Shown: positions 7,525-57,669 of the stretch, piece after piece
How the letters are laid out: every line of letters starts with the position of its first letter
Numbering within the stretch: position 1 is the stretch's first letter
DNA from: Octopus sinensis
Taxonomy: Eukaryota
DNA: 64,000 bases
Direction of reading: 5' to 3'
Assembly (NCBI RefSeq): GCF_006345805.1
Contig: NC_042998.1
Location: forward strand, 196,044,001-196,108,000
Position numbers and translations under genes: made by a program
Notes under the pieces: generated by a model
Seen by the model: the letters and a program-made list of their open reading frames with translations, nothing else
What the model was told of the DNA's origin: nothing
Database searches by the model: none

Positions 7525-7757
7525 TATTTCTTTATTGCCCACAAGGAGCTAAACACAGAGGAGACTAACAAAAACAGACAAACGGATTAAGTCAACTACA
7601 TCGACCCCAGTGCGTAACTGGTACTTTATTTATCGACCCCGAAAGGATGAACGGCATAGTCGACCTCGGCGGAATTTGAACTCAGAACATAAAGACAGAC
7701 GAAATACCGCTAAGCATTTCGCCCGGCGGGCTAACGACTCTGCCAGCTCGCCGCCCT
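7525..7757 (-). mobile_element. SINE family B (Deu/Nin-domain) monomer ending in the Tx1-like tail
   Basis: tRNA-like head ggcggcgagctggcag..., B-box gagttcaaattcc, core ctttcggggtcgataaataaagtaccag, tail ...ccttgtgggcaataaagaaat. Confidence 0.85.
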
Positions 7758-8440
7758 TAAATAATTAATATACCAACTCTACTGAGAAATATACGATCAC
7801 GGTGGTAAGTCCAATGACTGAAACAAAGGATGGACGAGAGATTTGACCCGAATACTTACTACAACAGACTAGAATCCATTAACAAAAACACACGAGAGCC
7901 CGTTGGTGGCGTTAAATCAAGCGACGGAGTAATGGCGGCGAGAGATAGATCGTCTGTTGTTCTACTTGATAATAATTCCAGTTCATCTAAATGATAGCTC
8001 GTTATCTGTTAAAACAACATGTTTACTGCATGCATTATTTACAATGGCTTCACCCCTGCATACCTTTCTTTACATTTTGCCTTTCCTCGTTTTATTGTTT
8101 CCATCTTTCCGACGAGAAACGTTCCGTTAACACTTCACCTCTTCTTCATCTTCTGTTCCGTCTCCCCCTTTCCCTCTCTTCCTTTACCTCTGTCACTCTC
8201 TCTTCCACCACCGCCACTACATATATATATATTATCCTATCTGCTTATTATCTTTATATATTCGGGCGAGGCTCCTAGTGATGACAGTTAATTAGTTATA
8301 AATATTTGTTTTTCACAGGAAATAAAATAAATGTTGAAAGCCTTAAAGTCAAGATGGCGGTACCTTACCTTCTTTAATCTGATGAATCTAGCTTCCTTCT
8401 TGTCGACAGTTCCGGCGTCTTTAACTTCTCGCTATCTTTA

Positions 8441-8835
8441 GCGGCGAGCTGGCAGAAACGTTAGCGCGCCGGGCGAAATACTTAGCAGTATTTCGTCTGC
8501 CGCTACGTTATGAGTTCAAATTCCGCCGAGGTCGACTTTGCCTTTCATGCTTTCAGGGTCGATTAAATAAGTACCAGTTACGCACTGGGGTCGATATAAT
8601 CGACTTAATCAGTTTGTCTGTCCTTGTTTGTCCCCTCTGTGTTTAGCCCCTTGTGGGCAGTAAAGAAATAGGTATTTCGCCCGTCGCTACGTTCTGAGTT
8701 CAAATTCCGCCGAGGTCAACTTTGCCTTTCATTCTTTCGGGGGTCAATAAAATAAGTACCAGCTGAGTACTGGGTTGATTTGATGGTCTTATTCCCCCCC
8801 CCAAATTGATGGCCTTGTGTCAAATTTTGAAACCA
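8441..8835 (+). mobile_element. SINE family B dimer with alternative terminal tail
   Basis: Head + unit with Tx1-like tail + headless second unit ending ccccaaattgatggccttgtgtcaaattttgaaacc. Confidence 0.85.
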
Positions 8836-9179
8836 ATATTTTGATGGGGCGTGTTACTTCAAAATGGGGTGGGGAGTAAGAGAATAAAACTTGTAACACA
8901 TATATGTATATATATATATATATAATACACTTCTAAATATCTCAGAGATATATATGCAGTAGTGGTACGATAGAGTAGTTGTATACTGTCAACTTAATCT
9001 GACAGTCCCATGAAGGAATCACACCACTGCTATTTAGCCCTAGGCAGTATCAACGCTTCCTCTCGGCCTTGACACATTTGCTGTGTCCTTATGTTTACAA
9101 GGGGGAGACAAGCACCTCCACCCGATGCAGGCTTAGCTGGGTGGAGGTGCTACACACATTTTTTCTCTCCTTTTTTTTT

Positions 9180-18320: not shown

Positions 18321-19125
<805 letters not shown>

Positions 19126-19180
19126 GGTGATGTACGTAATAGCAACGATGATGATACATTGATAGATAGGTAGATAGATA

Positions 19181-19515
19181 TTTCTTTATTAGCCACACAG
19201 GGCTGCACACAGATAGAACAAATTACAGGTAGAGCTTTTCTTTTGAAGGTATTAAAAAAAAAAAAAAAAAAAAAAAAAGGAAGGGGGAGGTTCGATCAAA
19301 AGGGATCGTAAAAGGAGAAAAGAGGACAAAAATAAGGGGGGTTAAAAAAAAAAAAAAAAAAAAAAAGGGGGGGAGAGGAAAAAAAAATGATCAATAGGGA
19401 TCGTTATCACAGAAATGTCAATATGAAGTGTAAAGGGGAGGACAGGTGAGGTTTACCCGTGGAAAGAAAAGCCTGCGGAAAAGACCACGGTAACCTCGGT
19501 CAATGAAGTCACATT

Positions 19516-19546
<31 letters not shown>

Positions 19547-21860
19547 GCAAATAAGCAACTCTCTGTTTTCGATTTCTGGGTTCATAGGACTATGCTCAAG
19601 GTGGCTTCGTCATTCATACGTGCCATTCTTGCTACATTCACCCATCTTTTTTAAAACATTCGCTAGACAAAACTTGCCTCTCTACTCTCACTTTCCTTTT
19701 CAAGTGGTACTTGAAGAAGTTGATGAGAGATTGACCAGAGAGGAAAGTGTTTGTCTCCAATCCTTTCAGACGCGTCCACCAGATACATTCTTTCGCCATA
19801 GCCACAAGGATGATGAAAATAGCTCTTCCTTCCCGTTTGAAGGAAGGAGGCGTGACAATATTGACGATAGACTCAGCTGATAAACCGACTCGTCCCACAC
19901 GTGACAGCAGTTGTTCGACATAAGCCCACAGGTCGGAAATTGTTGGACACTGAACGAGTGCGTGCAGAACGGTTTCGTCGCTCTGACCGCATCTCGGGCA
20001 GGTCGGCCCCGTGTTTCTCGAGCCGTGTCTGTAGAGCTTATCCCGAACGGGTAGCGCTTCTCGGTAGCACTGCCAGGCCAGGGATCTCTGGAAGTTGTCC
20101 ATGGGCCCTGGCCCGAAAGTCGTCCCGAACAGGCGGGTCAGGTACTCCTCGTCGACGTCCAGGTTCGCCCCGAGCTCGTCGTCGTACCTCCCCTCCACTA
20201 AACCCCTATAGAATGCTTTGGTTGTGTTGAAGTCACTTAAGGTCGACCCAGGACGGCAGAGTTGCTTGAGAGCAACGCGACACTCGCGGTGCCATTCGCC
20301 CTTCCTCGGCCTCTTTTTGATCCACGACTGCAGTTCGGTCATGGAGACGAGCTGCGGGAAAGCGTGCCTCACAAACGGCGACCACACCTGTTCACCGTCG
20401 TCTACATAGAGCCAGAGATGTCGCAGTCTCAGCGCGTGTCTGCGCATCATCAACCACGGCATGCCCAGCCCTCCTTTTAACGGGTGTTGACAGCAAATGG
20501 ATCGCCTGACCATCGGGACGCATCCTTTCCACAAGAAGCGAAAGAGGATGGTTGTAGTTTGGTGATGGTAGGGTCGGGACAAGGTACGACGGTCAGGCGG
20601 TAGTAGATGACGGACGCGATGTACGTGTTCGCCACCTCCGCTCGACCTTTTAGGGACAGTTTCCTCTCGGCCCATTGCCGGGCGAGAGTGACCACCCTAC
20701 TCGTTATCTCGTTCCAGTTCTTCTCCACTTGGAGGTCCGGACCAAACCAGACCCCGAGCAACTCAACCGGGCCGTCGGTCCAGCGTCCCACGACGGAGGC
20801 GCTGGTGGACGGCATGGGCTTGCTTCTCCAGGTGCCTAGTCGCAAGCCCACTGACTTTTCCCGGTTGATTTTCGCTCCTGTCACCGCTTCGTAGTTTTTC
20901 AGTGTCTCGCCGACCAGCTCGATGTGCTCGTGGCTAGACACTATGACGGTGACGTCGTCCGCGTATGCAGACACGCTCGTCCCGCATCCCAATTCTCGCG
21001 GGATGCCCCTTAGAGTCGCCAGCTTCCGCAGTAGTGGCTCAAGAGTCAATACGTATAGAAGCGCCGAGAGGGGGCATCCCTGACGGACCGAACGTGCAAT
21101 GTCGAAAGGTCTCGATAGATGTCCATTTACGCGAATTACCGAACGGATGCCTCTGTACAAGGCAGCTATCCAGCCGCGGAAGACGGGACCGAAACCAGCC
21201 GCTCTCAGGACTGCCTCCAAGTATCGATGGTCTACCCTATCAAAGGCTTTTGATTGATCCAAGTTGATCAGGGCCCCACCCATGCCAGGTTCGTTAACTA
21301 CCCTGTCTATGATGTAGCGCATCAGATGGAGGTTGTCATGGATGGTCCGGCCTGGCACGGCGCATGTTTGCGCCTTGTCGACCAGTTTCTCGATGACAAG
21401 CGCCAACCTCTTGGCTAGCACCTTGGCCAAAATTTTCAAGTCTGCATTAAGCAGAGTGATGGGCCTAAAGTTATCTATTACATTTCCCTTGTTTAGATCT
21501 TTCTTCAGCAGTGTTACGGCTCCTCGGCTCCGACTAAAACCAGGAATGCTCCCGTTTTGCTGCCAGTTGCAGTACACCGCCGCCAAGAGATCTCCAAACA
21601 AGTCTGGCATACAATTGTAAAGCTCGTAGGGTAGACCATCCAAACCCGGTGATTTGTCCCTCGAGCATTCTGCCATCGCTTCCCGCACTTCCGCCGCCGT
21701 GATGGCACCTTCGCAGCACCCTGCCTTTCTTGTCGAGAGTCGTGGTAGGCTATGTAGGTAGGCACTGAAGTCCACCCTACGTTCTTGCCCTCCACTCGTT
21801 CCGAACAGTCGGGCAAAATGCTGCTGAAAGGCCTCACACATTTTACTTGGCTCGAGCAAA
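19181..21860 (-). mobile_element. 5'-truncated Tx1/L1-clade LINE inserted in (GATA)n, ~21-bp TSD
   Basis: GC-rich; flanks tgatagataggtagatagata (19160-19180) and tgatagatagatagatagata (21861-21881); 3' end ...gccctgtgtggctaataaagaaa. Confidence 0.9.
19582..21859 (-). pseudogene. Tx1/L1 ORF2 remnant: reverse transcriptase + zf-RVT C-terminus
   Basis: Motifs FRPITLLNADLKILAKVLAKRL, LDQSKAFDRVDH, SVRQGCPLS, YADD, CPRCGQSDETVLHALVQC; only two apparent 1-nt frameshifts (about 20550, and an A-run near 19640). Confidence 0.9.
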
Positions 21861-23814: not shown

Positions 23815-24260
23815 TTCCACCACCACCACCAGCACCACCATTACTATGAACCATTGAATCCCATTACAAACACCGATAGCATTAGGATGAACACCCAGCA
23901 CCACCAGCACCACCACCATCATCATCACCACCACCACCACCACCGCCGCCGCCACCACCACCACCACCACCATCATCATCACCACCACCACCACCACCAC
24001 CACCGCCGCCGCCACCACCACAATCACCACCACCACCACCACCACCACCACCACAACCGTCGCCGCCGCCGCCATCGCGCCGCCGCCACCATTATGATTC
24101 CGCTATCATTTGCTTCCTTCATTTCTACCCCTCACCCCCGATACCCATTATTACTTTACTGTCATTACTAAAGCTCCTACCCCCGTTAATAGCCTTCACG
24201 GCACACACACAGCACACACACATACACACACAGCACACAGCACACTCACACACACACAGT

Positions 24261-24292
<32 letters not shown>

Positions 24293-24665
24293 ATATGCAC
24301 ACAAAACACAGATTATCAATGAACACCGCCACCTCTAACCTCACGACCACTAAAACCCCGCCATCTCCACCACTACCACCACCACCATCATCATAGAAAC
24401 AGTCACCTACACTATCACCGCCACCAACACCACCATCAACACCACAGTTTCCATCACCACCGCCACCACCAACACTATCATATCAACGCTACACCACCGC
24501 CACCATCATAACATCGCCACTCAACACTACAACTCCAACCACCATCACCACCACCACCACTACCACCACCATCGCCACCACCACCACCGTATCACTACAC
24601 TACCACTTAACCCAGCACCACCACCACCACCACCACCACCACCACCACCACCACCACCATCCCAT
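23815..24665. repeat. (CAC/CAT)n and (CA)n low-complexity region
   Basis: Direct reading. Confidence 0.9.
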
Positions 24666-33226: not shown

Positions 33227-33409
33227 AAGTTAGATAGGCAGACAGACTGTCGTACCTGCACACGAACGCGCGCACACACACACACACACACACATACAGG
33301 TGGTTTGTTTGTTAGATAGGTAGGTAGGTAGTTGGTGAACCTGTTTGCAAGATTACAATCTTCTAAGGAAACCAGAGAAGTCACCACCAGGTAAGTAACA
33401 AAATATTGA

Positions 33410-34010
33410 CTTCATATTTTGGCACAAAGCCAGCAGTTTCGGGGGTTGGGGGAGAGGGCTAAGTGTATTACATCGACCTCCAGTGTTCAGCTGGTACTTA
33501 CTTTATTGATCCCGAAAGGATGAAGGGCAAAGTTGATCTCAACGGAATTCGAACTCAGAACGCAAATACGGACGAAATGCTGGTAAGCTTTATCCCCGTG
33601 GTGCTAACGGTTCTTCTCTACTCTAGGCACAAGGCCCGAAATTTTTGGGGAGGGGGCCAATCGATTAGATCGACCCCAGTACGCAACTGGTACTCAATTT
33701 ATCGACCTCGAAAGGATAAAAGGCAAAGTCGACCTCGGCGGAATTTGAACTCAGAACGTAGAGGCAGACGAAATACCTATTTCTTTACTACCCACAAGCG
33801 GTTAAACACAGAGGGGACAAACAAGGACAGACAAACGGATTAAGTCGATTATATCGAGCCCAGTGTGTAACTGGTACTTAATTTATCGACCCCCGAAAGG
33901 ATGAAAGGCAAAGTTGACCTCGGCGGAATTTGAACTCAGAACATAAAGATAGACGAAATCCCGCTAAGCATTTCGCCCGGCGTGCTAACGTTTCTGCCAG
34001 CTCGCCGCCT
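33410..34010 (-). mobile_element. Two adjacent SINE-B copies (an old monomer and a dimer with terminal tail 0)
   Basis: Deu/Nin core repeated; head at about 34008. Confidence 0.8.
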
Positions 34011-36046: not shown

Positions 36047-36097
<51 letters not shown>

Positions 36098-36369
36098 CCT
36101 TGCATACATCACGCTCACGCGCTCTGTCTCTCACACACACACGCACACATGCACACACACACATACACATACCCTTGCATACACCACGCTCACGTGCTCT
36201 CTCTCTCTCTCACACACACACGAACACATGCACACACACACACACATACACATACCCTTGCATACACCACGCTCACGTGCTCTCTCTCTCTCACACACAC
36301 ACACATGCACGCCATATACACAGAATATAGACACACTATTTCACAGACGCAAGGACGCCCATCCTCGCT

Positions 36370-36416
<47 letters not shown>

Positions 36417-37821
36417 TCACACACACCACATTCACAGACACCCAGGTTTCAGTCATTTGCCTGCGGCCATGCTGGAGCACCGCCTTTAGACGTGCACACA
36501 CACACACACTCCCACACACCACATTCACAGACACCCAGGTTTCAGTCATTTGCCTGCGGTCATGCTAGAGCACCGCCTTTAGACGTGAACACACACACAC
36601 ACACACACACACGCACGCATTTCACGTGTGCACACAGACACACACATTCTCTCTCACACACCACAGACATAGACACACATTCATATGCACCCGCTTTCAC
36701 ACACCCACACACACACACTTTTACACACACACCATGTTTCGAGGAAATGGATTTGTCGTTTTGTTTCAACGATAAAATTATAATTCCAGTGAACACAAAT
36801 GTAAAATGTCTGAGTATTCCGTGGACAGAGTCAGTGTATGTACGTGATAAGGCTGGTGTTCGTTGAATTACAGTCCTGGGTCATCCAAGAACTTTCCCGA
36901 TTCCTGATTCTGTCTATCATGTGCTGTAAGACACTTTTTGCCAAAGATGCCACGCACTGGGAGCGAACTGGGAACCTCATGATCGCATTGCAATGCAGAA
37001 TCCTTAAGACACACACTTGTACACATACCTCCTCCTCCTCCTTCTTCTTCTTCTTCTTCTCTTTCTTCTCCCCCTTCTTCGTCTTTTTCTTCTTCTTGCT
37101 CTTTTTCTTCTTCTCCTTCTCCTGATTCTTCTCCTTCTTCTCCTCCTCCTTCTACTTCTTCTCCTCCTCCTCCTCCTCCATCATGTTCTTGTTCTTGCCC
37201 TTTTTCTTCTCCTCCTCCTCCTCCTCCTTCTTCTCTCTCTATCAAACCTGCATCATATATTTATAACGATTCTCTCCCCACCCCCCTGTCTTCGTCCCCA
37301 CTTATCTATTATATCTCACATAATATCTGCATAAAACTCACGCGCACGCGCGTACAACAATTAATTTTTTTTTCCCCCACATATGATGAGAGAGAGAAAA
37401 AAAAGAGCCACCTTAGGACATAGATCTACTTGATCAGGACTGATCCGAAACTAAACTATTTTCTCTTTCAAACACACACACACCCATACACTACCTGATC
37501 CCCCTCTCTCTCTTTCTCTAACTCACTCACTCAATCACATACATACACACACACGTTTTCCTGATGTCTAACAAGATAATGCATAGCTGTGGGGATAACA
37601 GATTCGCTTCACGGCTATGTGGAAAGGAGACCATCACAGATATCGCTAATTCTTTCGAATGTCCAACTTAAAGACGAATTTGTTCCTTCTAAGCCGCGAA
37701 TAATCAAAGCAAACTAAAAATAAACCTTCACTATTTCAAAGAAAATGTCTGCCAGTCATGTAATAAAGGTCGTCTGCAGAGCTACAGAGGAAGGCGCGTG
37801 GTCTAACGGTTAGAGTGTTGC

Positions 37822-38890: not shown

Positions 38891-38987
38891 TGTGTGTTTT
38901 ATACTGCTTAAAAACCGGTGGTCTTTTGGTTGTCTCATTATATCGCGTAACTTCGTGGTTTGGTTCGGCAATGGAGGTCGATAATAT

Positions 38988-39404
38988 ATTTCTTTACTAC
39001 CCACAAGGGGCCAAACACAGAGGGGACAAACAAGGACAGACAAAGGGATTAAGTCGATTACATCGACCCCAGTGCGAAACTGGTACTTTATTTATCGACC
39101 CCGAAAGGATGAAAGGCAAAGTCGACCTCGGCGGAATTTGAACTCAGAACGTAACGACAGACGAAATACCTATTTCTTTACTACCCACAAGGGGCTAAAC
39201 ACAGAGAGGAAAACAAGGACAGACAAAGGGATTGAGTCGATTATATTGACCTCAGTGTGTAACTGGTACTTATTTAATCGACCGCGAAAGGATGAAAGGC
39301 AAAGTCGACCTCGGCGGAATTTGAACCCAGAACGTAACGGCAGACGAAATACAGCTAAGCTTTTCGCCCGGCGTGCTAACGTTTCTGCCAGCTCGCCGCC
39401 TTTG
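38988..39404 (-). mobile_element. SINE-B dimer ending in the Tx1-like tail, 15-bp TSD
   Basis: TSD ggaggtcgataatat at 38973-38987 and 39405-39419. Confidence 0.9.
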
Positions 39405-40410: not shown

Positions 40411-41249
40411 AAAAAATAAATTTCACTAATTCTCATTGTGAAATTATGGGATGCCAGAATCACTACTTCCGGTCAATTTACCATCATTTTTTTTTTTGTC
40501 TTTAAACCCCTAAACTGCTTGTTATCCAAATCCTCCATTTTCGACATGGAACAAGCATCCCCGGGGCCCAGTGTGTGGGTGTTGTGACTCTCATCCTGTC
40601 GTAACCACAGAGTGTGTGTGTGCTTTTCCCTTTAATTGCCCTCCGGTAGTTTCTGACTCAATTTTCTTTTTACACTAAACACAATTTCCAATTTGCTTCT
40701 CCTTCGAAACTTAAAATAAAATTAACCAAAGAAGTGCTGCAAGGTCAATCAATTCGATTGTTAATTAATTGATATTACAGTTGGAAACTGAACAAAGCAA
40801 CTGCTAAGATAATTACACCCAGAATCAAGCGTAAATTGGTTGTCAAACCTAAATTCTTCATTCAATGTCACTTTATGTGATTAGAAAGACTCATTATCAT
40901 TTCGTTTCAGAACAGAAACACTATATTCGGGTTTCCCTGCGTTCAAGAAACTGTTTATGAAATAAGTTTAGTTCTCGTCACTTCACTGTTTGTCGTTGTA
41001 ATCACCAGTTTGACATGGTTCACGCTCATTCATCATTATAGCACCCACCTTCCTCTCTGTCACACTCTCCCGCTTTCGAAATAATTACCAGGACACTGTA
41101 CCGTCACTCTCTGCCTCTCTAATAGTGTGGAAGGCGCGTGGCGGAGTGGTTAGGGGTATTCGGTTCAAGCTCATAAGGACGCGAGTTCGATAGCTGAGGG
41201 TACATTCTGTTCTGGTTCACTCAGCTGGGGCAAAGACGAGTAATACCTG

Positions 41250-41620
41250 ACAGAAACGTTAGTGCGCCGGGCGAAATGCTTAGCGGTATTTCGTCTGCCG
41301 TTACGTTCTGAGTTCAAAGTCCACCGAGATCGACTTTGCCTTTCATCCTTTCGGGGTCGATAAATAAAGTACCAGCAACGCACTGGTGTCGATGTAACCG
41401 ACTTAATCCCTTTGTCTGTCCTTGTTTGTCCCCTCTGTGTTTCGCCCCTTGTGGGCAATAAAGAAATAGATATTTCGTCTGCCGTTACGTTCTGAGTTCA
41501 AATTCCGCCGAGGTCGACTTTGCCTTTCATCCTTTCGGGGTCGATTAAATAAATACCAGTTACGCACTGTCTTTGTTTGTCCCCTCTATGTTTAGCCCCT
41601 TGTGGGCAATAAAGAAATAT
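41250..41620 (+). mobile_element. 5'-truncated SINE-B dimer with Tx1-like tail inserted in a SINE-D
   Basis: TSD atacctg at 41243-41249 and 41621-41627; D sequence resumes after it. Confidence 0.8.
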
Positions 41621-52876: not shown

Positions 52877-53660
52877 AAGCGGCGAACTGGCAGAATCGTT
52901 AGCAGGTTGGGCGAAATGCTTAGCAGTATTTCGTCTGCCGTTACGTTCTGAGTTCAAATTCCACCGAAGTCGACTTTGCCTTTCATCCTGTCGGGATCGA
53001 TAAATTAAGTACTAGTTACGCACTGGGGTCGATATAATCGACTTAATCCCTTTGTCTGTCCTTGTTTGTCCTCTCTGTGTTTAGCCCCTTGTGGGTAGTA
53101 AAGAAATAGGTATTTCGTCTGCCGTTACGTTCTGAGTTCAAATTCCGCCGAGGTCGACTTTGCCTTTCATCCTTTCGGGATCGATTAAATAAGTACCAGT
53201 TGCGTACTGGGGTCGATCTAATCGACTTAATCCCTTTGTCTGTCCTTGTTTGTCCCCTCTCTGTGTTTAGCCCCTTGTGGGTAGTAAAGAAATAGGTATT
53301 CGTCTGCCGTTACGTTCTGAGTTCAAATTCCGCCGAGGTCGCTTTGCCTTTCATCCTTTCGGGATCGATTAATAAGTACCAGTTGCGTACTGGGGTCGAT
53401 CTAATCGACTTAATCCCTTTGTCTGTCCTTGTTTGTCCCTCTCTGTGTTTAAGCCCCTTGTGGGTAGTAAAGAAATAGGTATTTCGTCTGCCGTTACGTT
53501 CTGAGTTCAAATTCCGCCGAGGTCGACTTTGCCTTTCATCCTTTCGGGATCGATTAAATAAGTACCAGTTGCGTACTGGGGTCGATCTAATCGACTTAAT
53601 CCCTTTGTCTGTCCTTGTTTGTCCCCTCTGTGTTTAGCCCCTTGTGGGTAGTAAAGAAAT
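52877..53660 (+). mobile_element. SINE-B tetramer (~184-bp units) ending in the Tx1-like tail, 17-bp TSD
   Basis: TSD aggtaaaaccaatctca at 52860-52876 and 53661-53677; four B-boxes, four tails, one A-box head. Confidence 0.9.
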
Positions 53661-53872
53661 AGGTAAAACCAATCTCATTTTTAAGAGAAAAGGAGTTATT
53701 TCCCTTGAATAACAGTTCCGAATAGAAATGGATTTCTTTCACAGATTTCTGATCTCTGGGTCGATACTTCAATCTGAATATTTTCTACCAGTCTATCCAC
53801 CCCGCCCGTCACTTTCTTTCTTCTTACCAACTCTCACGTTGTGTGTGCGTATGTGTATGTATTATTTAATGG

Positions 53873-54504: not shown

Positions 54505-54772
54505 ATTTGAACTCAGAACGTAAAAACAGACGAAATACCTATTTCTTTACTACCCACAAGGGGCTAAACACAGAGGGGACAGACAAGGACAGACAAACGG
54601 ATTAAGTCGATTATATCGACCCCAGTGCGAATCTGGTACTTAATTTATCGACCCCGAAAGGCTGAAAGGCAATGTCAACCTCGGCGGAATTTGAACTCAG
54701 AACGTAACGGCAGACGAAATACCGCTAAGCATTTTGCCCGGCGTGCTAACGTTTCTGCCAGCTCGCCACCTT
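54505..54772 (-). mobile_element. SINE-B: one unit plus a partial second unit
   Basis: Family sequence. Confidence 0.85.
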
Positions 54773-56516
54773 ACAATAAAGTTCGTTATTAATAAATCAC
54801 TATTTGTTCTTATAACGTTTATTTGAATAAGGTCGAGAGTTTGTCGGTTGCTATCTCAGTACTTATGTTGCTATCGAGATAAAAGTTCTTTTTGCCAGGT
54901 CACGAGAAGCAACAGAGTAGAACAAATCACTTGGAAAAGCCATTTTGATACAACGTTAATAAATTATGCAGCTTCAGGAAGTTTGGTCGTTAAAAATCAC
55001 TTAGACTGAACCCTAAGGTAGCGATTTCGAATCTTCACAAATCACCACCACCACCATCGCCCAAATTTTAATGAGATTAAATGAAGAGATAATGTGTTTT
55101 GGAGGAAGAGAATGTATTCATACATGTAATTTATGAATTATTTCTAATTCAGACACAAGGGCAAGAATTTTGAGGGACGGGGTTACTTAAAACGCGTCCA
55201 GTTCTTGGCTGTTACTTTATTCTATCGACCCTGGAAGGATGAAAGGTAAAGTTGTTCTCGGCAGGATTTGAACGCAGGAAGTTGATGAAAGCAGTTTTTT
55301 GTTTTAGGCAGTTTTCTTTATAGAGAAGGAAAGAAAGAAAAATAAAGTGTTAAAAGTATAAAAAATAAAATTATCGAGAGAAAAAAAAACCCATCAGTAC
55401 CCCCCCCCCCCCAAGGAAAAAAGTGGCTGGGGATTAAAGAGGGGAAATGGAGTAATGTGTTGTTATAGGGCAAATGGCACGTTCAGCCACACCACGGAGC
55501 CATGATTGCAAAGGTATTGCCGCAGGGAATGGTCAGTGACACTCACTGCAACCGCTACTCCAGCTCGCAGGACTCATTTCTCAAGCGGGCCGCAGCTATC
55601 CCGATTTTCAGAAGTGCAGGCCCGAGAAGATTTATCCCGCGTAATCCAGGGATTTGGACAATGAGGAAGCTTTGATTGGGTAACTCTAGCTGCTAGAAAT
55701 AACAGCCAGTATATCCCTGAAACCACACCTTGGTATAAAAAAAACAAAAAAAAACAAGGATGTGTTACAACCCTTAAAACATTAAATTAAGAAAGAAAAA
55801 AATCATGACTGGAAGTCTTTGATCATAAATTTGCTCCTTCAGAGTTAATCCTGGGCGAAACAAAACCCTTTCTCGTTGGTACAAAGCCTGAAATTTTGGT
55901 GGAAGAAACCAGTCGATTCCTTCGACTTCAGTACTCAACAGGTTCTTATTTCATCAACTCCAAAAGGATAAAAGGCAAAATCGACCTCGACGGAATTCGA
56001 ACTTAGAACATAAAGACTCACGAAACGCTGCTATGCAGTTTCTCCGGCGCGCTAACGATTCTGCCAACTCGCCGCCTCCATATACTCACGAGTGATTACA
56101 ATAACCGCCAAAATACAAGTTATCTCCCTTGCATTATATGGTTGCAGTGGTTATTCATACGAACTGATGAAGTTATCTCCCTTGTATTAAAAATTTCCTT
56201 TATCTCTGCTCGCCTAGTTTTTAGCTGTTCGTCACGGTTGATTGACGTTCCTGTGAATATATTTCTGCGATAGATATCTGAATCAAGTTTATTATATATT
56301 CTTTAATATTCACATTTAATCATGTACTTTATATGCACTTTCTGACAAGTTGTGGTGCATCTGAGCACTGTATACAATAATTTCATTATTATTATTATTA
56401 TTATAATCATGTTCACACCAGTTTCTTCTGTGGAGCATCATGTCCGCATTTCAGTTATTATTAAGGATCTTTTTCTTTAGGTTGCCTCAGTTTCATGAGA
56501 CTTTTTGGTGGAAGTC

Positions 56517-57446
56517 AAGGCGGCGAGCTGGCAGAATCGTTAGCACGCCGGGCGAAATGCTTCGCGATATTTCGTCTGCCGTTACGTTCTGAGTTCAAAT
56601 TCCGCCGAGGTCGACTTTGCCTTTCATCCTTTCGGGGTCGATAAATTAAGTACTAGTGAAACACTGGGTTCGATGTAATCGACTTAATCCGTTTGTCTGT
56701 CCTTGTTTGTCCTCTCTGTTTTTATCCCCTTGTGGGTAGTAAAGAAATAGGTATTTCGTCTGCCGTTACGTTTTGAGTTCAAACTCCGCCGAGGTCGACT
56801 TTGTCTTTCGTCCTTTCGGGGTCGATAAATTAAGTACCAGTTACGCACTGGGGTCGATGTAATCGACTTAATCCGTTTGTCTGTCCTTGTTTGTCCTCTC
56901 TGTTTTTAGACCCTTGTGGGTAGTAAAGGAATAGGTATTTCGTCTGTCTTTACGTTCTGAGTTCAAATTCCGCCGAGGTCGACTTTGCCTTTCATCCTTT
57001 CGGGGTCGATAAATTAAGTACCAGTTACGCACTGGGATCGATGTAATCGACTTAATCCGTTTGTCTGTCCTTGTTTGTCCCCTCTGTGTTTAGCCCCTTG
57101 TGGGTAGTGAAGAAATAGGTATTTCGTCTGCCGTTACGTTCTGAGTTCAAACTCCGCCGAGGTCGACTTTGTCTTTCGTCCTTTCGGGGTCGATAAATTA
57201 AGTACCAGTTACGCACTGGGGTCGATGTAATCGACTTAATCCGTTTGTCTGTCTTTGTTTAGCCCCTTTGTGGGTAGTAAAGAAATAGGTATTTCGTCTG
57301 CCGTCACGTTCTGAGTTCAAATTCGACTTTGCCTTTCATCCTTTCGGGGTCAATAAATTAAGGACCAGTTGCGAACTGGGGGCGATCCAATCGACTGGAC
57401 CCCTCCCTAAAAATTTCGGGTCTTGTGATTAGAGTAGAAAAGAATA
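56517..57446 (+). mobile_element. SINE-B pentamer with terminal tail 0, 13-bp TSD
   Basis: TSD tttggtggaagtc at 56504-56516 and 57447-57459; five B-boxes, four internal Tx1-like tails. Confidence 0.9.
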
Positions 57447-57669
57447 TTTGGTGGAAGTCGTTGTTGTTTAGTCCCACGTCTGACCTCACTGAACATAACT
57501 AGTCGCTCTAGCCGTGACCATCCTGTGTAATTTTAATTCTTAAGTTACAAATGTATGGGTGTGCTCCCTCCTACTTTGTTACCTCTTACTTTTCTTTAAA
57601 AAATGCATATTTTTTATAAAATTTTCCACAAATACATTTCAAATGATGTAGATTACAATTATATCGGAA

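What the first reader, a model, noticed from the sequence alone, without database searches (positions are those of the whole stretch)
19181..19225. SINE-B carries the 3' tail of the Tx1 LINE sitting in the same window: a candidate SINE/Tx1 partnership
Seen: the LINE sense-strand end tttgttctatctgtgtgcagccctgtgtggctaataaagaaa(ta) aligns without gaps to the SINE-B unit end tttgtcccctctgtgtttagccccttgtgggcaataaagaaa(ta) at 35/44 positions against my by-eye consensus (a match or two fewer for single copies such as 8620-8670 and 41424-41467). Both end on the same AATAAAGAAA/AGTAAAGAAA terminus. SINE-B copies that stop exactly at this tail have TSDs (38988-39404, 41250-41620, 52877-53660). Known: SINEs borrow the 3' end of their partner LINE (CR1, L2 and RTE pairs are the classic cases); to my knowledge Tx1-partnered SINEs are much more rarely described. 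Inference: a Deu/Nin-domain tRNA SINE acquired a Tx1 tail and is mobilised by this young Tx1 family.
Basis: partly seen in the sequence, partly recalled or inferred. Interest (0 to 1): 0.8.

Follow-up and report, generated by a model that had tools for sequence, protein, structure and literature searches.

The report
Octopus SINE shares Tx1 LINE tail
An abundant short repeat (SINE-B) in this octopus-like genome ends in the same ~44-base sequence as a Tx1-type LINE in the same window, and as related LINEs in Octopus sinensis and Argonauta hians, so the SINE most likely copies itself using that LINE's enzyme; I found no published account of this pairing for octopus.

Summary
The last 44 nt of the minus-strand LINE (19179-19222) match the SINE-B tail consensus at 35/44 without gaps. 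No other 44-mer in the window, apart from SINE-B copies, reaches 28/44. Local alignment gives z=11.2, with 0 of 2000 shuffles as good.

The tail belongs to the LINE. It lies inside a 21-nt target-site duplication (TSD) that flanks the whole 5'-truncated copy (19181-21860). The same tail ends six further related LINE 3' UTRs: O. sinensis, three in Argonauta hians, and two unnamed samples. The O. sinensis LINE tail is closer to SINE-B (37/43). In Argonauta, local SINEs and a local LINE share a nearly identical tail (z=19).

The LINE groups with proteins NCBI labels 'transposon TX1' (259 and 236 bits; 82% bootstrap). Human L1 ORF2p scores 124 bits.

SINE-B copies end at ...AAAGAAATA without poly(A), with 13-17-nt TSDs. 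The tails can form a small hairpin with a CUUGU loop and one compensatory pair.

Best reading: a stringent-type SINE/LINE partnership with a Tx1-group LINE, shared across octopods. Trans-mobilisation, the hairpin's role and the exact driver subfamily are inferred. The Deu/Nin domain was not tested, and the tRNA origin of the head tested inconclusive. No paper in the searched library describes this pair; Repbase and Dfam could not be checked.

The parts
19179..19222 (-). 3' terminal tail of the LINE: TTTGTTCTATCTGTGTGCAGCCCTGTGTGGCTAATAAAGAAATA. The last TA overlaps the TSD. Shared with SINE-B.
   Evidence: 35/44 to the SINE-B consensus. The only non-SINE 44-mer in the window with 28 or more matches. 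blastn E=5e-7. z=11.2.
19181..21860 (-). 5'-truncated Tx1-group non-LTR retrotransposon (LINE) copy, 2.68 kb. Corresponds to about residues 397-1122 of a 1161-aa ORF2 plus the 3' UTR. ORF1 and the endonuclease (APE) domain are missing.
   Evidence: Only one copy in the window.
20477..21859 (-). Reverse-transcriptase ORF (460 aa), RVT_1 domain.
   Evidence: Pfam RVT_1 E=2e-31. 68% identity to an Argonauta hians LINE protein. Human L1 ORF2p 124 bits. Tx1-labelled alligator and Betta proteins 259 and 236 bits.
19638..20675 (-). C-terminal ORF2 segment with the CCHC zf-RVT motif. In a different frame from the RT ORF, through a single frameshift at about 20546-20564.
   Evidence: Pfam zf-RVT E=3.6e-8. 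tblastn frames -1 and -3 join at 20546-20564.
19181..19637 (-). LINE 3' UTR (457 nt), with one A26 tract and two long T tracts, ending in the shared tail.
   Evidence: Collinear with the 3' UTR of an independent copy, L007 (83% aa identity), into the first ~18 nt of the tail, where that contig ends.
21861..21881 (.). 5' copy of the LINE's target-site duplication (TATCTATCTATCTATCTATCA on the minus strand).
   Evidence: 20/21 identical to the 3' copy.
19160..19180 (.). 3' copy of the LINE's target-site duplication (TATCTATCTACCTATCTATCA on the minus strand), directly after ...AATAAAGAAA.
52877..53662 (+). SINE-B array F: one head plus four 184-nt units, each ending in the tail. One 17-nt TSD, AGGTAAAACCAATCTCA.
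38987..39404 (-). SINE-B array D: head plus two units, ending ...GGGTAGTAAAGAAATA. 15-nt TSD, ATATTATCGACCTCC.
41247..41619 (+). SINE-B array E: slightly 5'-truncated, two units (the second with an internal deletion), ending ...GGGCAATAAAGAAATA. Only 5-7 nt of flank identity.
7525..7756 (-). SINE-B monomer A, the oldest copy here (JC 0.087), ending ...GGGCAATAAAGAAATA. No TSD detectable.
54505..54769 (-). SINE-B copy G: one full unit with the tail, plus 34 nt of a second unit.
56518..57447 (+). Composite array I: head plus four SINE-B units with the shared tail, then a last partial unit carrying the different 'tail-A'. One 13-nt TSD, TTTGGTGGAAGTC.
8439..8849 (+). Composite array B: one SINE-B unit with the shared tail (8612-8671), then a partial unit ending in tail-A.
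33404..34010 (-). Composite array C: one SINE-B unit with the shared tail (33777-33836), then further units ending in tail-A.

Best explanation
The 44 nt at 19179-19222 (minus strand) are the true 3' end of a 5'-truncated, TSD-flanked LINE. The LINE belongs to the Tx1 group of the L1 superfamily.

A ~35-45-nt tail module, ...TCTGTGTTT-GGCCCTTGTGGCT-AATAAAGAAAT, is ancestral to this LINE clade in octopods. Short non-coding Pol III-type elements have copied it onto their 3' ends: SINE-B here, and several SINE families in Argonauta.

This is a stringent-type SINE/LINE partnership. The proposed cycle:
1. The LINE's ORF2 protein (endonuclease, reverse transcriptase, CCHC domain) recognises the tail on its own RNA. 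The recognised feature is probably a small hairpin: a 4-bp G/C stem with a CUUGU loop, sitting on a weaker lower stem that includes AAUAAA.
2. The same protein recognises the same tail on SINE RNA.
3. It nicks target DNA and starts reverse transcription at the terminal ...GAAAUA.
4. The result is insertions without poly(A), flanked by 13-21-bp duplications.

Shown: the homology, its position at both elements' termini, the TSDs, the absence of A-tails, the LINE clade, and co-occurrence of matching tails in two octopod lineages.

Inferred: RNA-structure recognition, trans-mobilisation, Pol III transcription of the SINE, and which LINE subfamily is the actual driver.
For: Homology and its significance:
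- 35/44 ungapped. The LINE tail is the only non-SINE 44-mer of the window above 28/44.
- blastn E=5e-7. z=11.2, 0 of 2000 shuffles.

The tail is part of the LINE:
- A 21-nt TSD (20/21 identical) encloses the RT ORF, the 3' UTR and the tail.
- Six further related LINE 3' UTRs end in the same module directly downstream of a zf-RVT ORF2: L009 O. sinensis; L001 (two copies) and L010 A. hians; L002 JGI; L011 ENA, a divergent variant.
- A seventh, L007, is collinear into the tail until its contig ends.

Other LINE tails are closer to SINE-B. O. sinensis is 37/43 (z=14.3) and A. hians L010 is 35/43.

In Argonauta, SINE tails (TTCTGTGTTCGGCCCTTGTGGCTAATAGAGAAATC) match the Argonauta LINE tail (TTCTGTGTCGGCCCTTGTGGCTAATAAAGAAATC). 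z=19.3, with a TSD on a SINE copy.

All 16 SINE-B tails are conserved. Four terminal copies stop at AAAGAAATA with no A-tail. TSDs are 13, 15 and 17 nt.

Clade:
- RVT_1 plus zf-RVT. A full-length relative, P0191, has APE + RT + zf-RVT.
- 259 and 236 bits to NCBI 'transposon TX1' proteins against 124 bits to human L1 ORF2p.
- The NJ tree groups the LINE with Tx1-labelled proteins at 82%. Human L1 and a plant sequence are split off at 100%.
- Mollusc RT phylogenies list Tx1 among the clades found and do not list L1 (PMC10294476).

Hairpin:
- RNAalifold and single-sequence folds find the same stem.
- 90% of cells are paired against 10-50% when the partner is slid. One G-C to C-G compensatory pair.

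Ages are compatible. SINE-B copies are at JC 0.02-0.09. The LINE has one frameshift and no stop codon in 2.2 kb.
Against: - No experiment and no genome-wide consensus. There is only one LINE copy in the window.
- That copy's tail is less similar to SINE-B (35/44) than the tails of sister subfamilies, so it may not be the driver.
- The hairpin is only 3-4 bp. Its covariation rests on one event (all SINE-B rows share it). L011 and L010 weaken the stem. Folding energies are not better than shuffles for most sequences.
- The Tx1 label rests on NCBI's automated names and a small NJ tree, not on curated Tx1 references.
- Target specificity, common in Tx1, is not seen.
- The SINE head is not called as tRNA by ARAGORN or Rfam.
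Confidence: 0.85

Rival explanations
1. The partnership is real, but the driver of SINE-B is a sister Tx1-group subfamily, like the O. sinensis L009 or A. hians L010 elements. The LINE copy in the window would then be only a relative carrying a diverged version of the same tail.
For: The O. sinensis L009 LINE tail matches SINE-B at 37/43, including the GTCCCC(C)TCT(A/G)TGTTT stretch. The A. hians L010 tail matches at 35/43. The window LINE matches at 35/44, with a changed loop (CTGTGT instead of CTTGT). The C-terminal domains of these subfamilies are only 47-60% identical to the window LINE.
Against: No L009-like copy was found in the window. Stringent LINEs can tolerate some tail divergence. 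No activity data exist for any subfamily.
Confidence: 0.35
2. The direction is reversed. An ancestral LINE of this clade captured its 3' end from a SINE, for example through a SINE insertion in the 3' UTR of a master copy. The tail would then be SINE-derived.
For: The data show shared ancestry of the tails, not direction. SINEs with this tail far outnumber LINEs in the loci examined.
Against: The tail sits at the end of LINE subfamilies that differ by 40-50% in protein sequence, in both Octopus and Argonauta. The SINEs that carry it have unrelated heads or bodies (window SINE-B, Ah SINE 1-3, Ah SINE2 4-5). One LINE-to-SINE origin followed by spread is the simpler account, and it is the rule in known pairs (PMC3747384).
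Confidence: 0.08
3. The tail is a relic. SINE-B once used this LINE, but its recent copies were made by another LINE clade (for example RTE or CR1, both abundant in octopus) or by a relaxed mechanism.
For: RTE, Dong-R4 and CR1 are reported as the most active octopus LINEs (PMC13282606). No direct activity link was tested.
Against: All 16 tails are well conserved to the very last base, including the youngest units (JC 0.02-0.03). Copies end exactly at the tail without A-tails or microsatellite ends. TSD lengths of 13-17 nt resemble the LINE's 21 nt.
Confidence: 0.05
4. Local artefact. A 5'-truncated SINE-B fragment happened to insert at, or be joined by template switching to, the end of this one LINE copy.
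For: Only one LINE copy is in the window. 5'-truncated SINE fragments are common.
Against: The TSD encloses the RT ORF and the tail as one insertion. The window tail differs from every SINE-B copy at 8-12 positions. Six further related LINE 3' UTRs from other genomes have the tail at the same place, and L007 is collinear into it.
Confidence: 0.02
5. Chance or low-complexity resemblance: a T/G-rich stretch plus a shared AATAAA signal.
For: The tail contains a poly(A)-signal-like AATAAA and TG-rich runs.
Against: z=11-19 against dinucleotide shuffles. No other 44-mer in 64 kb comes within 7 matches.
Confidence: 0.01

Closest known systems
Stringent-type SINE/LINE pairs of the L2/CR1/RTE clades (eel UnaSINE1/UnaL2, zebrafish ZfL2; Kajikawa & Okada 2002 and Hayashi et al. 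2014, PMC4176376; list of 58 pairs in PMC3747384)
   Same: The SINE's last ~40-60 nt are homologous to the LINE's 3' UTR end. Both stop at the same base without poly(A). A small stem-loop near the end is the presumed or proven recognition element.
   Different: The LINE clade is Tx1/L1 superfamily rather than L2, CR1 or RTE. No 3' microsatellite repeat is consistently present. Recognition is not tested experimentally here.
L1-clade stringent pairs: maize/sorghum LINE1-1_ZM with ZmSINE2/3, and Chlamydomonas L1-1_CR with SINEX-3_CR (Ohshima 2012, PMC3472496)
   Same: An L1-superfamily LINE shares a specific 3' end, with a stem-loop, with a SINE. This shows that L1-like elements are not always poly(A)-relaxed.
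   Different: Those pairs are in plants and algae, and several end in poly(A). This pair is in an animal, in the Tx1 branch, and has no poly(A). Ohshima found only three L1-tailed SINEs among 58 pairs. All three are in green plants or algae. Octopus, mollusc and squid do not occur in the review that reprints the table.
Tx1-Mar LINEs and SINEU in crocodilians (Kojima 2015, PMC4494074)
   Same: A Tx1-clade LINE is proposed as the mobiliser of a SINE.
   Different: That case rests on a shared target-site preference (Mariner-N4_AMi) and shared snRNA-derived 5' heads, not on a shared 3' tail. SINEU heads derive from snRNA. Here the link is the 3' tail, and insertion sites look dispersed.
Highly-conserved-domain (HCD) tRNA SINEs of bivalves and their LINE partners (Martelossi et al. 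2024, PMC11481361)
   Same: Mollusc SINEs with conserved central domains carry tails taken from LINE 3' UTRs. The same SINE body can carry different LINE tails. Tandem SINE arrays of the type TSD-(SINE)n-TSD are described there.
   Different: The authors report at least four partner LINE lineages, and the word Tx1 does not occur in the paper. Cephalopods are not covered.
Mammalian L1 with Alu/B1 (relaxed type)
   Same: Same superfamily of ORF2 protein. The closest solved structure is human L1 ORF2p, E=5e-35. TSDs are of similar length.
   Different: L1 recognises poly(A). The elements here have no A-tail and share a specific sequence instead.

Membership tests
Stringent-type SINE/LINE partnership (shared 3' tail) | The 3' end of the SINE is homologous to the 3' end of the LINE's 3' UTR | tested here: met
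   35/44 (window LINE), 37/43 (O. sinensis LINE) and a near-identical pair within Argonauta. z=11-19.
Stringent-type SINE/LINE partnership (shared 3' tail) | [quoted passage not shown] | tested here: met
   The LINE ends ...AATAAAGAAA(TA) followed by a 21-nt TSD. SINE-B ends ...AAAGAAATA followed by TSDs of 13, 15 and 17 nt. No A-tails.
Stringent-type SINE/LINE partnership (shared 3' tail) | SINE and LINE coexist in the same genome | tested here: met
   Both are in the window. Both are in Argonauta loci L001 and L010.
Stringent-type SINE/LINE partnership (shared 3' tail) | A conserved RNA stem-loop in the tail serves as the recognition element | tested here: inconclusive
   A 4-bp stem with a CUUGU loop is predicted by RNAalifold and single folds. 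90% of cells pair against 10-50% in slid controls. There is one compensatory pair. The stem is short, rests on one covariation event, and its energies are not better than shuffles.
Stringent-type SINE/LINE partnership (shared 3' tail) | The LINE protein mobilises the SINE in trans, dependent on the tail | not testable with these tools
   Needs a retrotransposition assay.
Stringent-type SINE/LINE partnership (shared 3' tail) | Overlapping periods of activity | tested here: inconclusive
   SINE-B copies are at JC 0.02-0.09 from the window consensus. The LINE copy has no stop codon and one frameshift in 2.2 kb, which argues for low divergence. No LINE family consensus was available.
Tx1 clade of non-LTR retrotransposons (L1 superfamily) | The RT groups with Tx1 reference elements rather than with L1 proper or other clades | tested here: met
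   259 and 236 bits to NCBI 'transposon TX1 uncharacterized 149 kDa protein' (Alligator, Betta), against 124 bits to human L1 ORF2p. NJ tree: 82% with the Tx1-labelled group; human L1 and a plant sequence outside at 100%. Caveat: the labels are automated names and no curated Tx1 set was used.
Tx1 clade of non-LTR retrotransposons (L1 superfamily) | ORF2 with an N-terminal APE endonuclease, an RT and a C-terminal CCHC motif | tested here: met
   The window copy has RVT_1 and zf-RVT. It is truncated upstream of APE. The full-length relative P0191 (1161 aa) has Exo_endo_phos + RVT_1 + zf-RVT.
Tx1 clade of non-LTR retrotransposons (L1 superfamily) | Target-sequence-specific insertion (frequent in the clade but not universal) | tested here: inconclusive
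   The window copy sits in a (TATC)5 run. L002 and L010 are followed by (ATT)n, and L011 by (CA)n. The others have unrelated flanks. SINE-B TSDs are unrelated to each other. Too few sites to judge.
tRNA-derived SINE with a Deu/Nin-DC core domain | tRNA-derived head with Pol III A and B boxes | tested here: inconclusive
   B-box-like AGTTCAAATTCC and A-box-like TGGCAGAAACG lie about 52 nt apart (sequence). There is no TTTT in the consensus, which holds for 6% of shuffles. ARAGORN and Rfam tRNA give no hit.
tRNA-derived SINE with a Deu/Nin-DC core domain | Central domain homologous to the Nin-DC/Deu consensus | not tested
   No reference Nin-DC or Deu sequence was available (SINEBase supplements are not held). 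The literature says octopus SINEs are mainly tRNA-Core and tRNA-Deu (PMC8967140). The motif ...CATCCTTTCGGGGTCGATAAATTAAGTACCAG... fits my memory of the domain, but that is a lead only.
Relaxed (poly(A)-dependent) L1-type mobilisation | SINE and LINE copies end in poly(A) or A-rich tails and share no specific tail | tested here: not met
   No A-tails on any terminal copy, and a specific shared tail is present.

The most novel reading that the evidence does not exclude
The dominant octopus SINEs (the tRNA-Deu-type elements behind the octopod SINE expansion) are driven by Tx1-group LINEs through a conserved 3' hairpin with a CUUGU loop. They would not be driven by the RTE or CR1 elements that have drawn attention. 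This would be the first animal example of an L1-superfamily LINE that recognises its template stringently and shares its 3' tail with a tRNA-type SINE. The partnership would date to before the Octopus/Argonauta split. A second SINE tail ('tail-A') may come from a sister lineage of the same LINE clade.
Probability: 0.45. Interest if true: 0.65.

Novelty: new member of a known kind. Interest (0 to 1): 0.5.

Why it matters
SINEs are the largest repeat class in Octopus genomes, and their bursts have been linked to genome rearrangement and neural expression. In the papers I could search, the enzyme source for these SINEs is not named. Attention has gone to an RTE element.

A Tx1-group partner gives a concrete, testable driver: tail-swap and hairpin mutants in a retrotransposition assay.

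It would also add an animal case to the very short list of L1-superfamily LINEs that recognise a specific 3' tail rather than poly(A). That bears on how template recognition evolved in the L1/Tx1 lineage.

In practice it lets annotators classify these 'unclassified' octopus SINEs by their LINE partner.

Tried and rejected
- Names for LINE relatives through cluster look-ups: none useful. Solved instead with a profile search that returned Tx1-labelled proteins.
- ARAGORN, and Rfam at both gathering and E<=10 thresholds, on the SINE head: no tRNA call.
- Pfam on the other long ORFs of the window, to find further LINEs for a cross-clade control: none found. 'Matched equally well by an unrelated LINE clade' could therefore only be tested against the window's own sequence.
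- SINEBase, Kojima 2015 and Ohshima 2012 supplements: not held. Identity with the published OK/OR1/OR2 octopus SINEs, or with Repbase entries, could not be checked.
It is an octopod: 97% identity over a short stretch to an O. bimaculoides protein.
- Extended 11-bp hairpin: 87% of cells paired, but no extra covariation. Kept only as a possibility.
- Link between 'tail-A' and the L005/L006 LINE tails: z of 5.1 and 3.4 across species. Kept as a lead, not a claim.
- Nested-insertion and chance explanations: rejected, as set out under the rival explanations.
Full report
**Observation**

The window is AT-rich, microsatellite-rich animal DNA. The LINE's closest protein relatives come from Argonauta hians, Octopus sinensis and O. 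bimaculoides, so it is octopod DNA.

Read on the minus strand, 19179-19222 is TTTGTTCTATCTGTGTGCAGCCCTGTGTGGCTAATAAAGAAATA. The window holds 16 copies of the SINE-B tail. Their majority consensus is TTTGTCCCCTCTGTGTTTAGCCCCTTGTGGGTAGTAAAGAAATA, with a common variant ...GGGCAATAAAGAAATA.

The two align end to end without gaps at 35/44. Against single copies the figure is 32-36/44.

- A blastn search with one SINE-B monomer picks out the LINE tail unaided (E=5e-7).
- Of all ~128,000 44-mers on both strands, the background is 11.3 +/- 3.0 matches. Only SINE-B copies and this site reach 28.
- The local alignment score is 43, against 15.3 +/- 2.5 in 2000 dinucleotide shuffles, and none reaches it.

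**The LINE**

The element runs from 21860 down to 19181 on the minus strand.

- It has a 460-aa ORF with RVT_1 (20477-21859).
- It has a 345-aa ORF with the CCHC zf-RVT motif (19638-20675).
- The two are joined by a single frameshift near 20546-20564.
- A 457-nt 3' UTR follows.
- The copy corresponds to residues ~397-1122 of a 1161-aa full-length ORF2 in a relative that also has the APE endonuclease. It is therefore 5'-truncated, as is usual for LINE insertions.
- It is flanked by TATCTATCTATCTATCTATCA (21881-21861) and TATCTATCTACCTATCTATCA (19180-19160), a 21-nt target-site duplication identical at 20/21 positions.

The 3' copy of the duplication starts right after ...AATAAAGAAA. The tail was therefore part of the same retrotransposed RNA as the RT gene.

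**The tail is a property of the LINE clade, not of this copy**

I fetched DNA around related ORF2 C-termini. Six LINE 3' UTRs end in the same module:

- O. sinensis L009: ...TTGTCCCCCTCTATGTTTGGGCCCTTGTGGCTAATAAAGAAAT
- A. hians L001, two copies: ...TTCTGTGTCGGCCCTTGTGGCTAATAAAGAAATC and ...TTCTGTGTCAGCCAGGTGGCTAAGAAAGAAAT
- A. hians L010: ...GTCCCCTCTATGTTTTTGCCCTTGTGGCTAATAAAAGAAATA, followed by (ATT)n
- A JGI sample, L002: ...GGGCCCTTGTGGCCAATAAAAGAAAT, followed by (ATT)n
- An ENA sample, L011: a divergent variant followed by (CA)n

L007, 83% identical in protein to the window LINE, is collinear with the window's 3' UTR into the first ~18 nt of the tail, where its contig ends.

These subfamilies differ by 17-53% in C-terminal protein sequence. 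The tail is therefore old within the clade. The O. sinensis and A. hians L010 tails are closer to SINE-B (37/43 and 35/43) than the window copy is.

**SINE-B**

A 233-nt consensus was built from 17 units. It has three parts:

- A ~49-nt head.
- A 184-nt body, with a B-box-like AGTTCAAATTCC and a conserved stretch ...CATCCTTTCGGGGTCGATAAATTAAGTACCAG...
- The tail.

Copies lie at JC 0.02-0.09 from the consensus. Terminal copies stop at ...AAAGAAATA with no A-tail. TSDs are 15 nt (38987-39404), 17 nt (52877-53662) and 13 nt (56518-57447). The copy at 41247-41619 has only 5-7 nt of flank identity, and 7525-7756 has none.

The consensus has seven TTT runs but no TTTT. That holds for only 6% of dinucleotide shuffles and fits Pol III transcription. 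ARAGORN and Rfam do not recognise the head as tRNA, so the tRNA origin stays unverified here. I could not test the Deu/Nin-DC assignment. The literature states that octopus SINEs are mostly tRNA-Core and tRNA-Deu (PMC8967140).

**The same pairing in a second lineage**

The Argonauta loci contain several SINE copies with different heads. Their tails are TTCTGTGTT(T/C)GGCCCTTGTGGCTAA(C/T)AGAGAAATC. The Argonauta LINE tail is TTCTGTGTCGGCCCTTGTGGCTAATAAAGAAATC. The two differ by one indel and one or two substitutions (z=19.3). One SINE copy has a clean TSD, CTATTTCAAGGAA.

Two further Argonauta repeats with another body carry the same tail.

A 15-sequence alignment of LINE and SINE tails shows a block of ~35 nearly invariant columns.

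So matching tails of a LINE and its co-resident SINEs are seen in two octopod lineages. The partnership probably predates their split.

**Clade of the LINE**

- The closest solved structure is human L1 ORF2p (124 bits, E=5e-35). R2 proteins score far lower.
- An exhaustive search of 50%-identity representatives gave hundreds of 1100-1300-aa relatives at 36-42% identity.
- A profile built from 42 of them retrieves proteins NCBI names 'transposon TX1 uncharacterized 149 kDa protein', from Betta, Alligator and Takifugu, at E down to 1e-277.
- The window RT scores 259 bits (Alligator) and 236 bits (Betta) against these.
- In an NJ tree of 401 columns, the window LINE, Argonauta, L005/L006 and a Patella element group with the Tx1-labelled vertebrate proteins at 82%. 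Human L1 ORF2p and a plant sequence fall outside a 100% split.
- Published RT phylogenies of molluscs list Tx1 among the LINE clades found, and L1 is not among those listed (PMC10294476). O. vulgaris has 13 recently active L1-Tx1 families (PMC13282606).

I accept the Tx1 assignment, with one caveat: my references are automated labels, not curated Tx1 consensus sequences.

**How it most likely works**

By established knowledge of stringent-type LINEs, the ORF2 protein binds a stem-loop in the 3' tail of its own RNA, and of SINE RNA carrying the same tail. It then primes reverse transcription at a nicked target (Kajikawa & Okada 2002 and Hayashi et al. 2014, PMC4176376; review PMC3747384).

Here every tail can form a 4-bp stem (GGCC/GGCY, or GCCC/GGGY in SINE-B) closed by a CUUGU loop. 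It lies just upstream of AAUAAAGAAAU. Single-sequence folds and RNAalifold find the same stem.

- 90% of cells pair, against 10-50% when partners are slid.
- The second pair switches from G-C to C-G in SINE-B.
- A lower stem that pairs UCUGUGU with AAUAAAGA raises the helix to 11 pairs at 87% paired, but adds no covariation.

This support is modest. The stem is short, the compensatory change is a single event, and most folding energies are no better than shuffles.

The absence of A-tails, the exact shared terminus and the 13-21-nt TSDs are shown directly. The protein-RNA recognition and trans-mobilisation are inferred.

**Ages**

The LINE copy has no in-frame stop codon in 2.2 kb and one frameshift.

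At 5% neutral divergence I would expect about five stops. This estimate is my own arithmetic and assumes ~4-5% of random substitutions create stops. On that basis the copy is probably no older than the SINE-B copies.

Ages are therefore compatible, but a real comparison needs genome-wide data.

**Which subfamily drives SINE-B is open**

The window LINE's tail has a different loop (CUGUGU) and is further from SINE-B than the L009-like tail. A sister subfamily is a serious candidate.

**Known or new**

The kind is classic. Within the papers I could search:

- Ohshima's survey of 58 tail-sharing pairs found only three with L1-clade tails, all in plants or algae (PMC3472496). Octopus, mollusc and squid do not occur in the review that reprints the table (PMC3747384).
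- Kojima proposed Tx1-Mar as the mobiliser of crocodilian SINEU from target preference and shared heads, not from a 3' tail (PMC4494074).
- The bivalve survey reports at least four partner lineages, and the word Tx1 does not occur in the paper (PMC11481361).
- The octopus repeat papers name no partner for the SINEs.

Repbase, Dfam and SINEBase could not be consulted. I rate it a new member of a known kind, with a rarely documented LINE clade as partner.

**Leads seen on the way**

- SINE-B forms arrays of one head plus up to five headless units. Every junction is at the same base, and the whole array sits inside one TSD. This suggests multimeric master copies or template jumps during reverse transcription.
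- Four arrays end in a different tail...CCCCnAAAnTTnnnGGCYTTGTGCCAAA...CAATATTT. It resembles the 3' ends of sister LINEs L005 and L006, again with a GGC/GCC stem and a (C/U)UUGU loop. Support is only z=5.1 and 3.4.

Noticed in passing
window 52877-53662, 56518-57447, 38987-39404, 33404-34010, 8439-8849: SINE-B occurs as one head followed by 2-5 headless 184-nt units in tandem. Every internal junction is at the same base (...AAAGAAATAG|GTATTTCGTCTGCC...). The whole array sits inside a single TSD. This implies multimeric source copies or repeated template jumps during reverse transcription. Bivalve TSD-(SINE)n-TSD arrays are described in PMC11481361.
   Followed up: partly
window 8797-8849, 33404-33460 (-), 55850-55910 (-), 57405-57447; loci L005 5870-5937, L006 8110-8180: A second SINE tail ('tail-A': ...CCCCnAAAnTTnnnGGCYTTGTGCCAAA..GAA..CAATATTT) replaces the shared tail at the end of four arrays. 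It resembles the 3' ends of sister Tx1-like LINEs from two ENA assemblies, and again has a GGC/GCC stem with a (C/U)UUGU loop. Significance is only moderate (z=5.1 and 3.4; 2 and 12 of 2000 shuffles).
   Followed up: partly
protein P0224: An NCBI protein labelled 'MAG: zinc-binding domain-containing protein [Herbaspirillum sp.]' is 61% identical over 99% of the octopod LINE C-terminal domain. This is probably cephalopod DNA contaminating a bacterial metagenome-assembled genome. The JGI and ENA 'metagenome' contigs L002, L004, L007, L008 and L011 are likewise host LINE fragments.
   Followed up: no
proteins P0245, P0388-P0397 (Patella caerulea KAK6191799-KAK6191823); locus L005: A related ORF2 is annotated at least 10 times in consecutive gene models on one Patella chromosome. 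L005 shows ORF1 reappearing ~1.7 kb after ORF2. Some members of this LINE group therefore form tandem arrays, as target-specific Tx1 elements inserted in tandem repeats would.
   Followed up: no
window 18322-19125 and 19160-19180: An 800-bp (TATC)n microsatellite lies 55 nt beyond the LINE's 3' end. The LINE's own TSD is a short run of the same repeat in the opposite orientation. Several related LINE copies are followed by microsatellites: (ATT)n in L002 and L010, (CA)n in L011. It is unclear whether this reflects target preference or tail slippage.
   Followed up: partly
window 19255-19280, 19340-19367, 19525-19552: The LINE 3' UTR contains one A26 tract and two T23-T28 tracts on the sense strand. 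L005's 3' UTR also has a T34 tract. Their function, if any, is unknown.
   Followed up: no
loci L005 490-1677 and 6884-8089; L006 1832-3142: The putative ORF1 proteins of the sister LINEs (395-436 aa) have a CCHC zinc knuckle (best E=4e-5) and no Transposase_22 (mammalian L1 ORF1) domain.
   Followed up: partly
window 36049-36612 and 23895-24660: There are 83- and 93-nt tandem repeats embedded in (CA)n, and long (CCA)n/(ACC)n arrays that create spurious His- and Val-rich ORFs. These look like ordinary satellite or microsatellite sequence.
   Followed up: no
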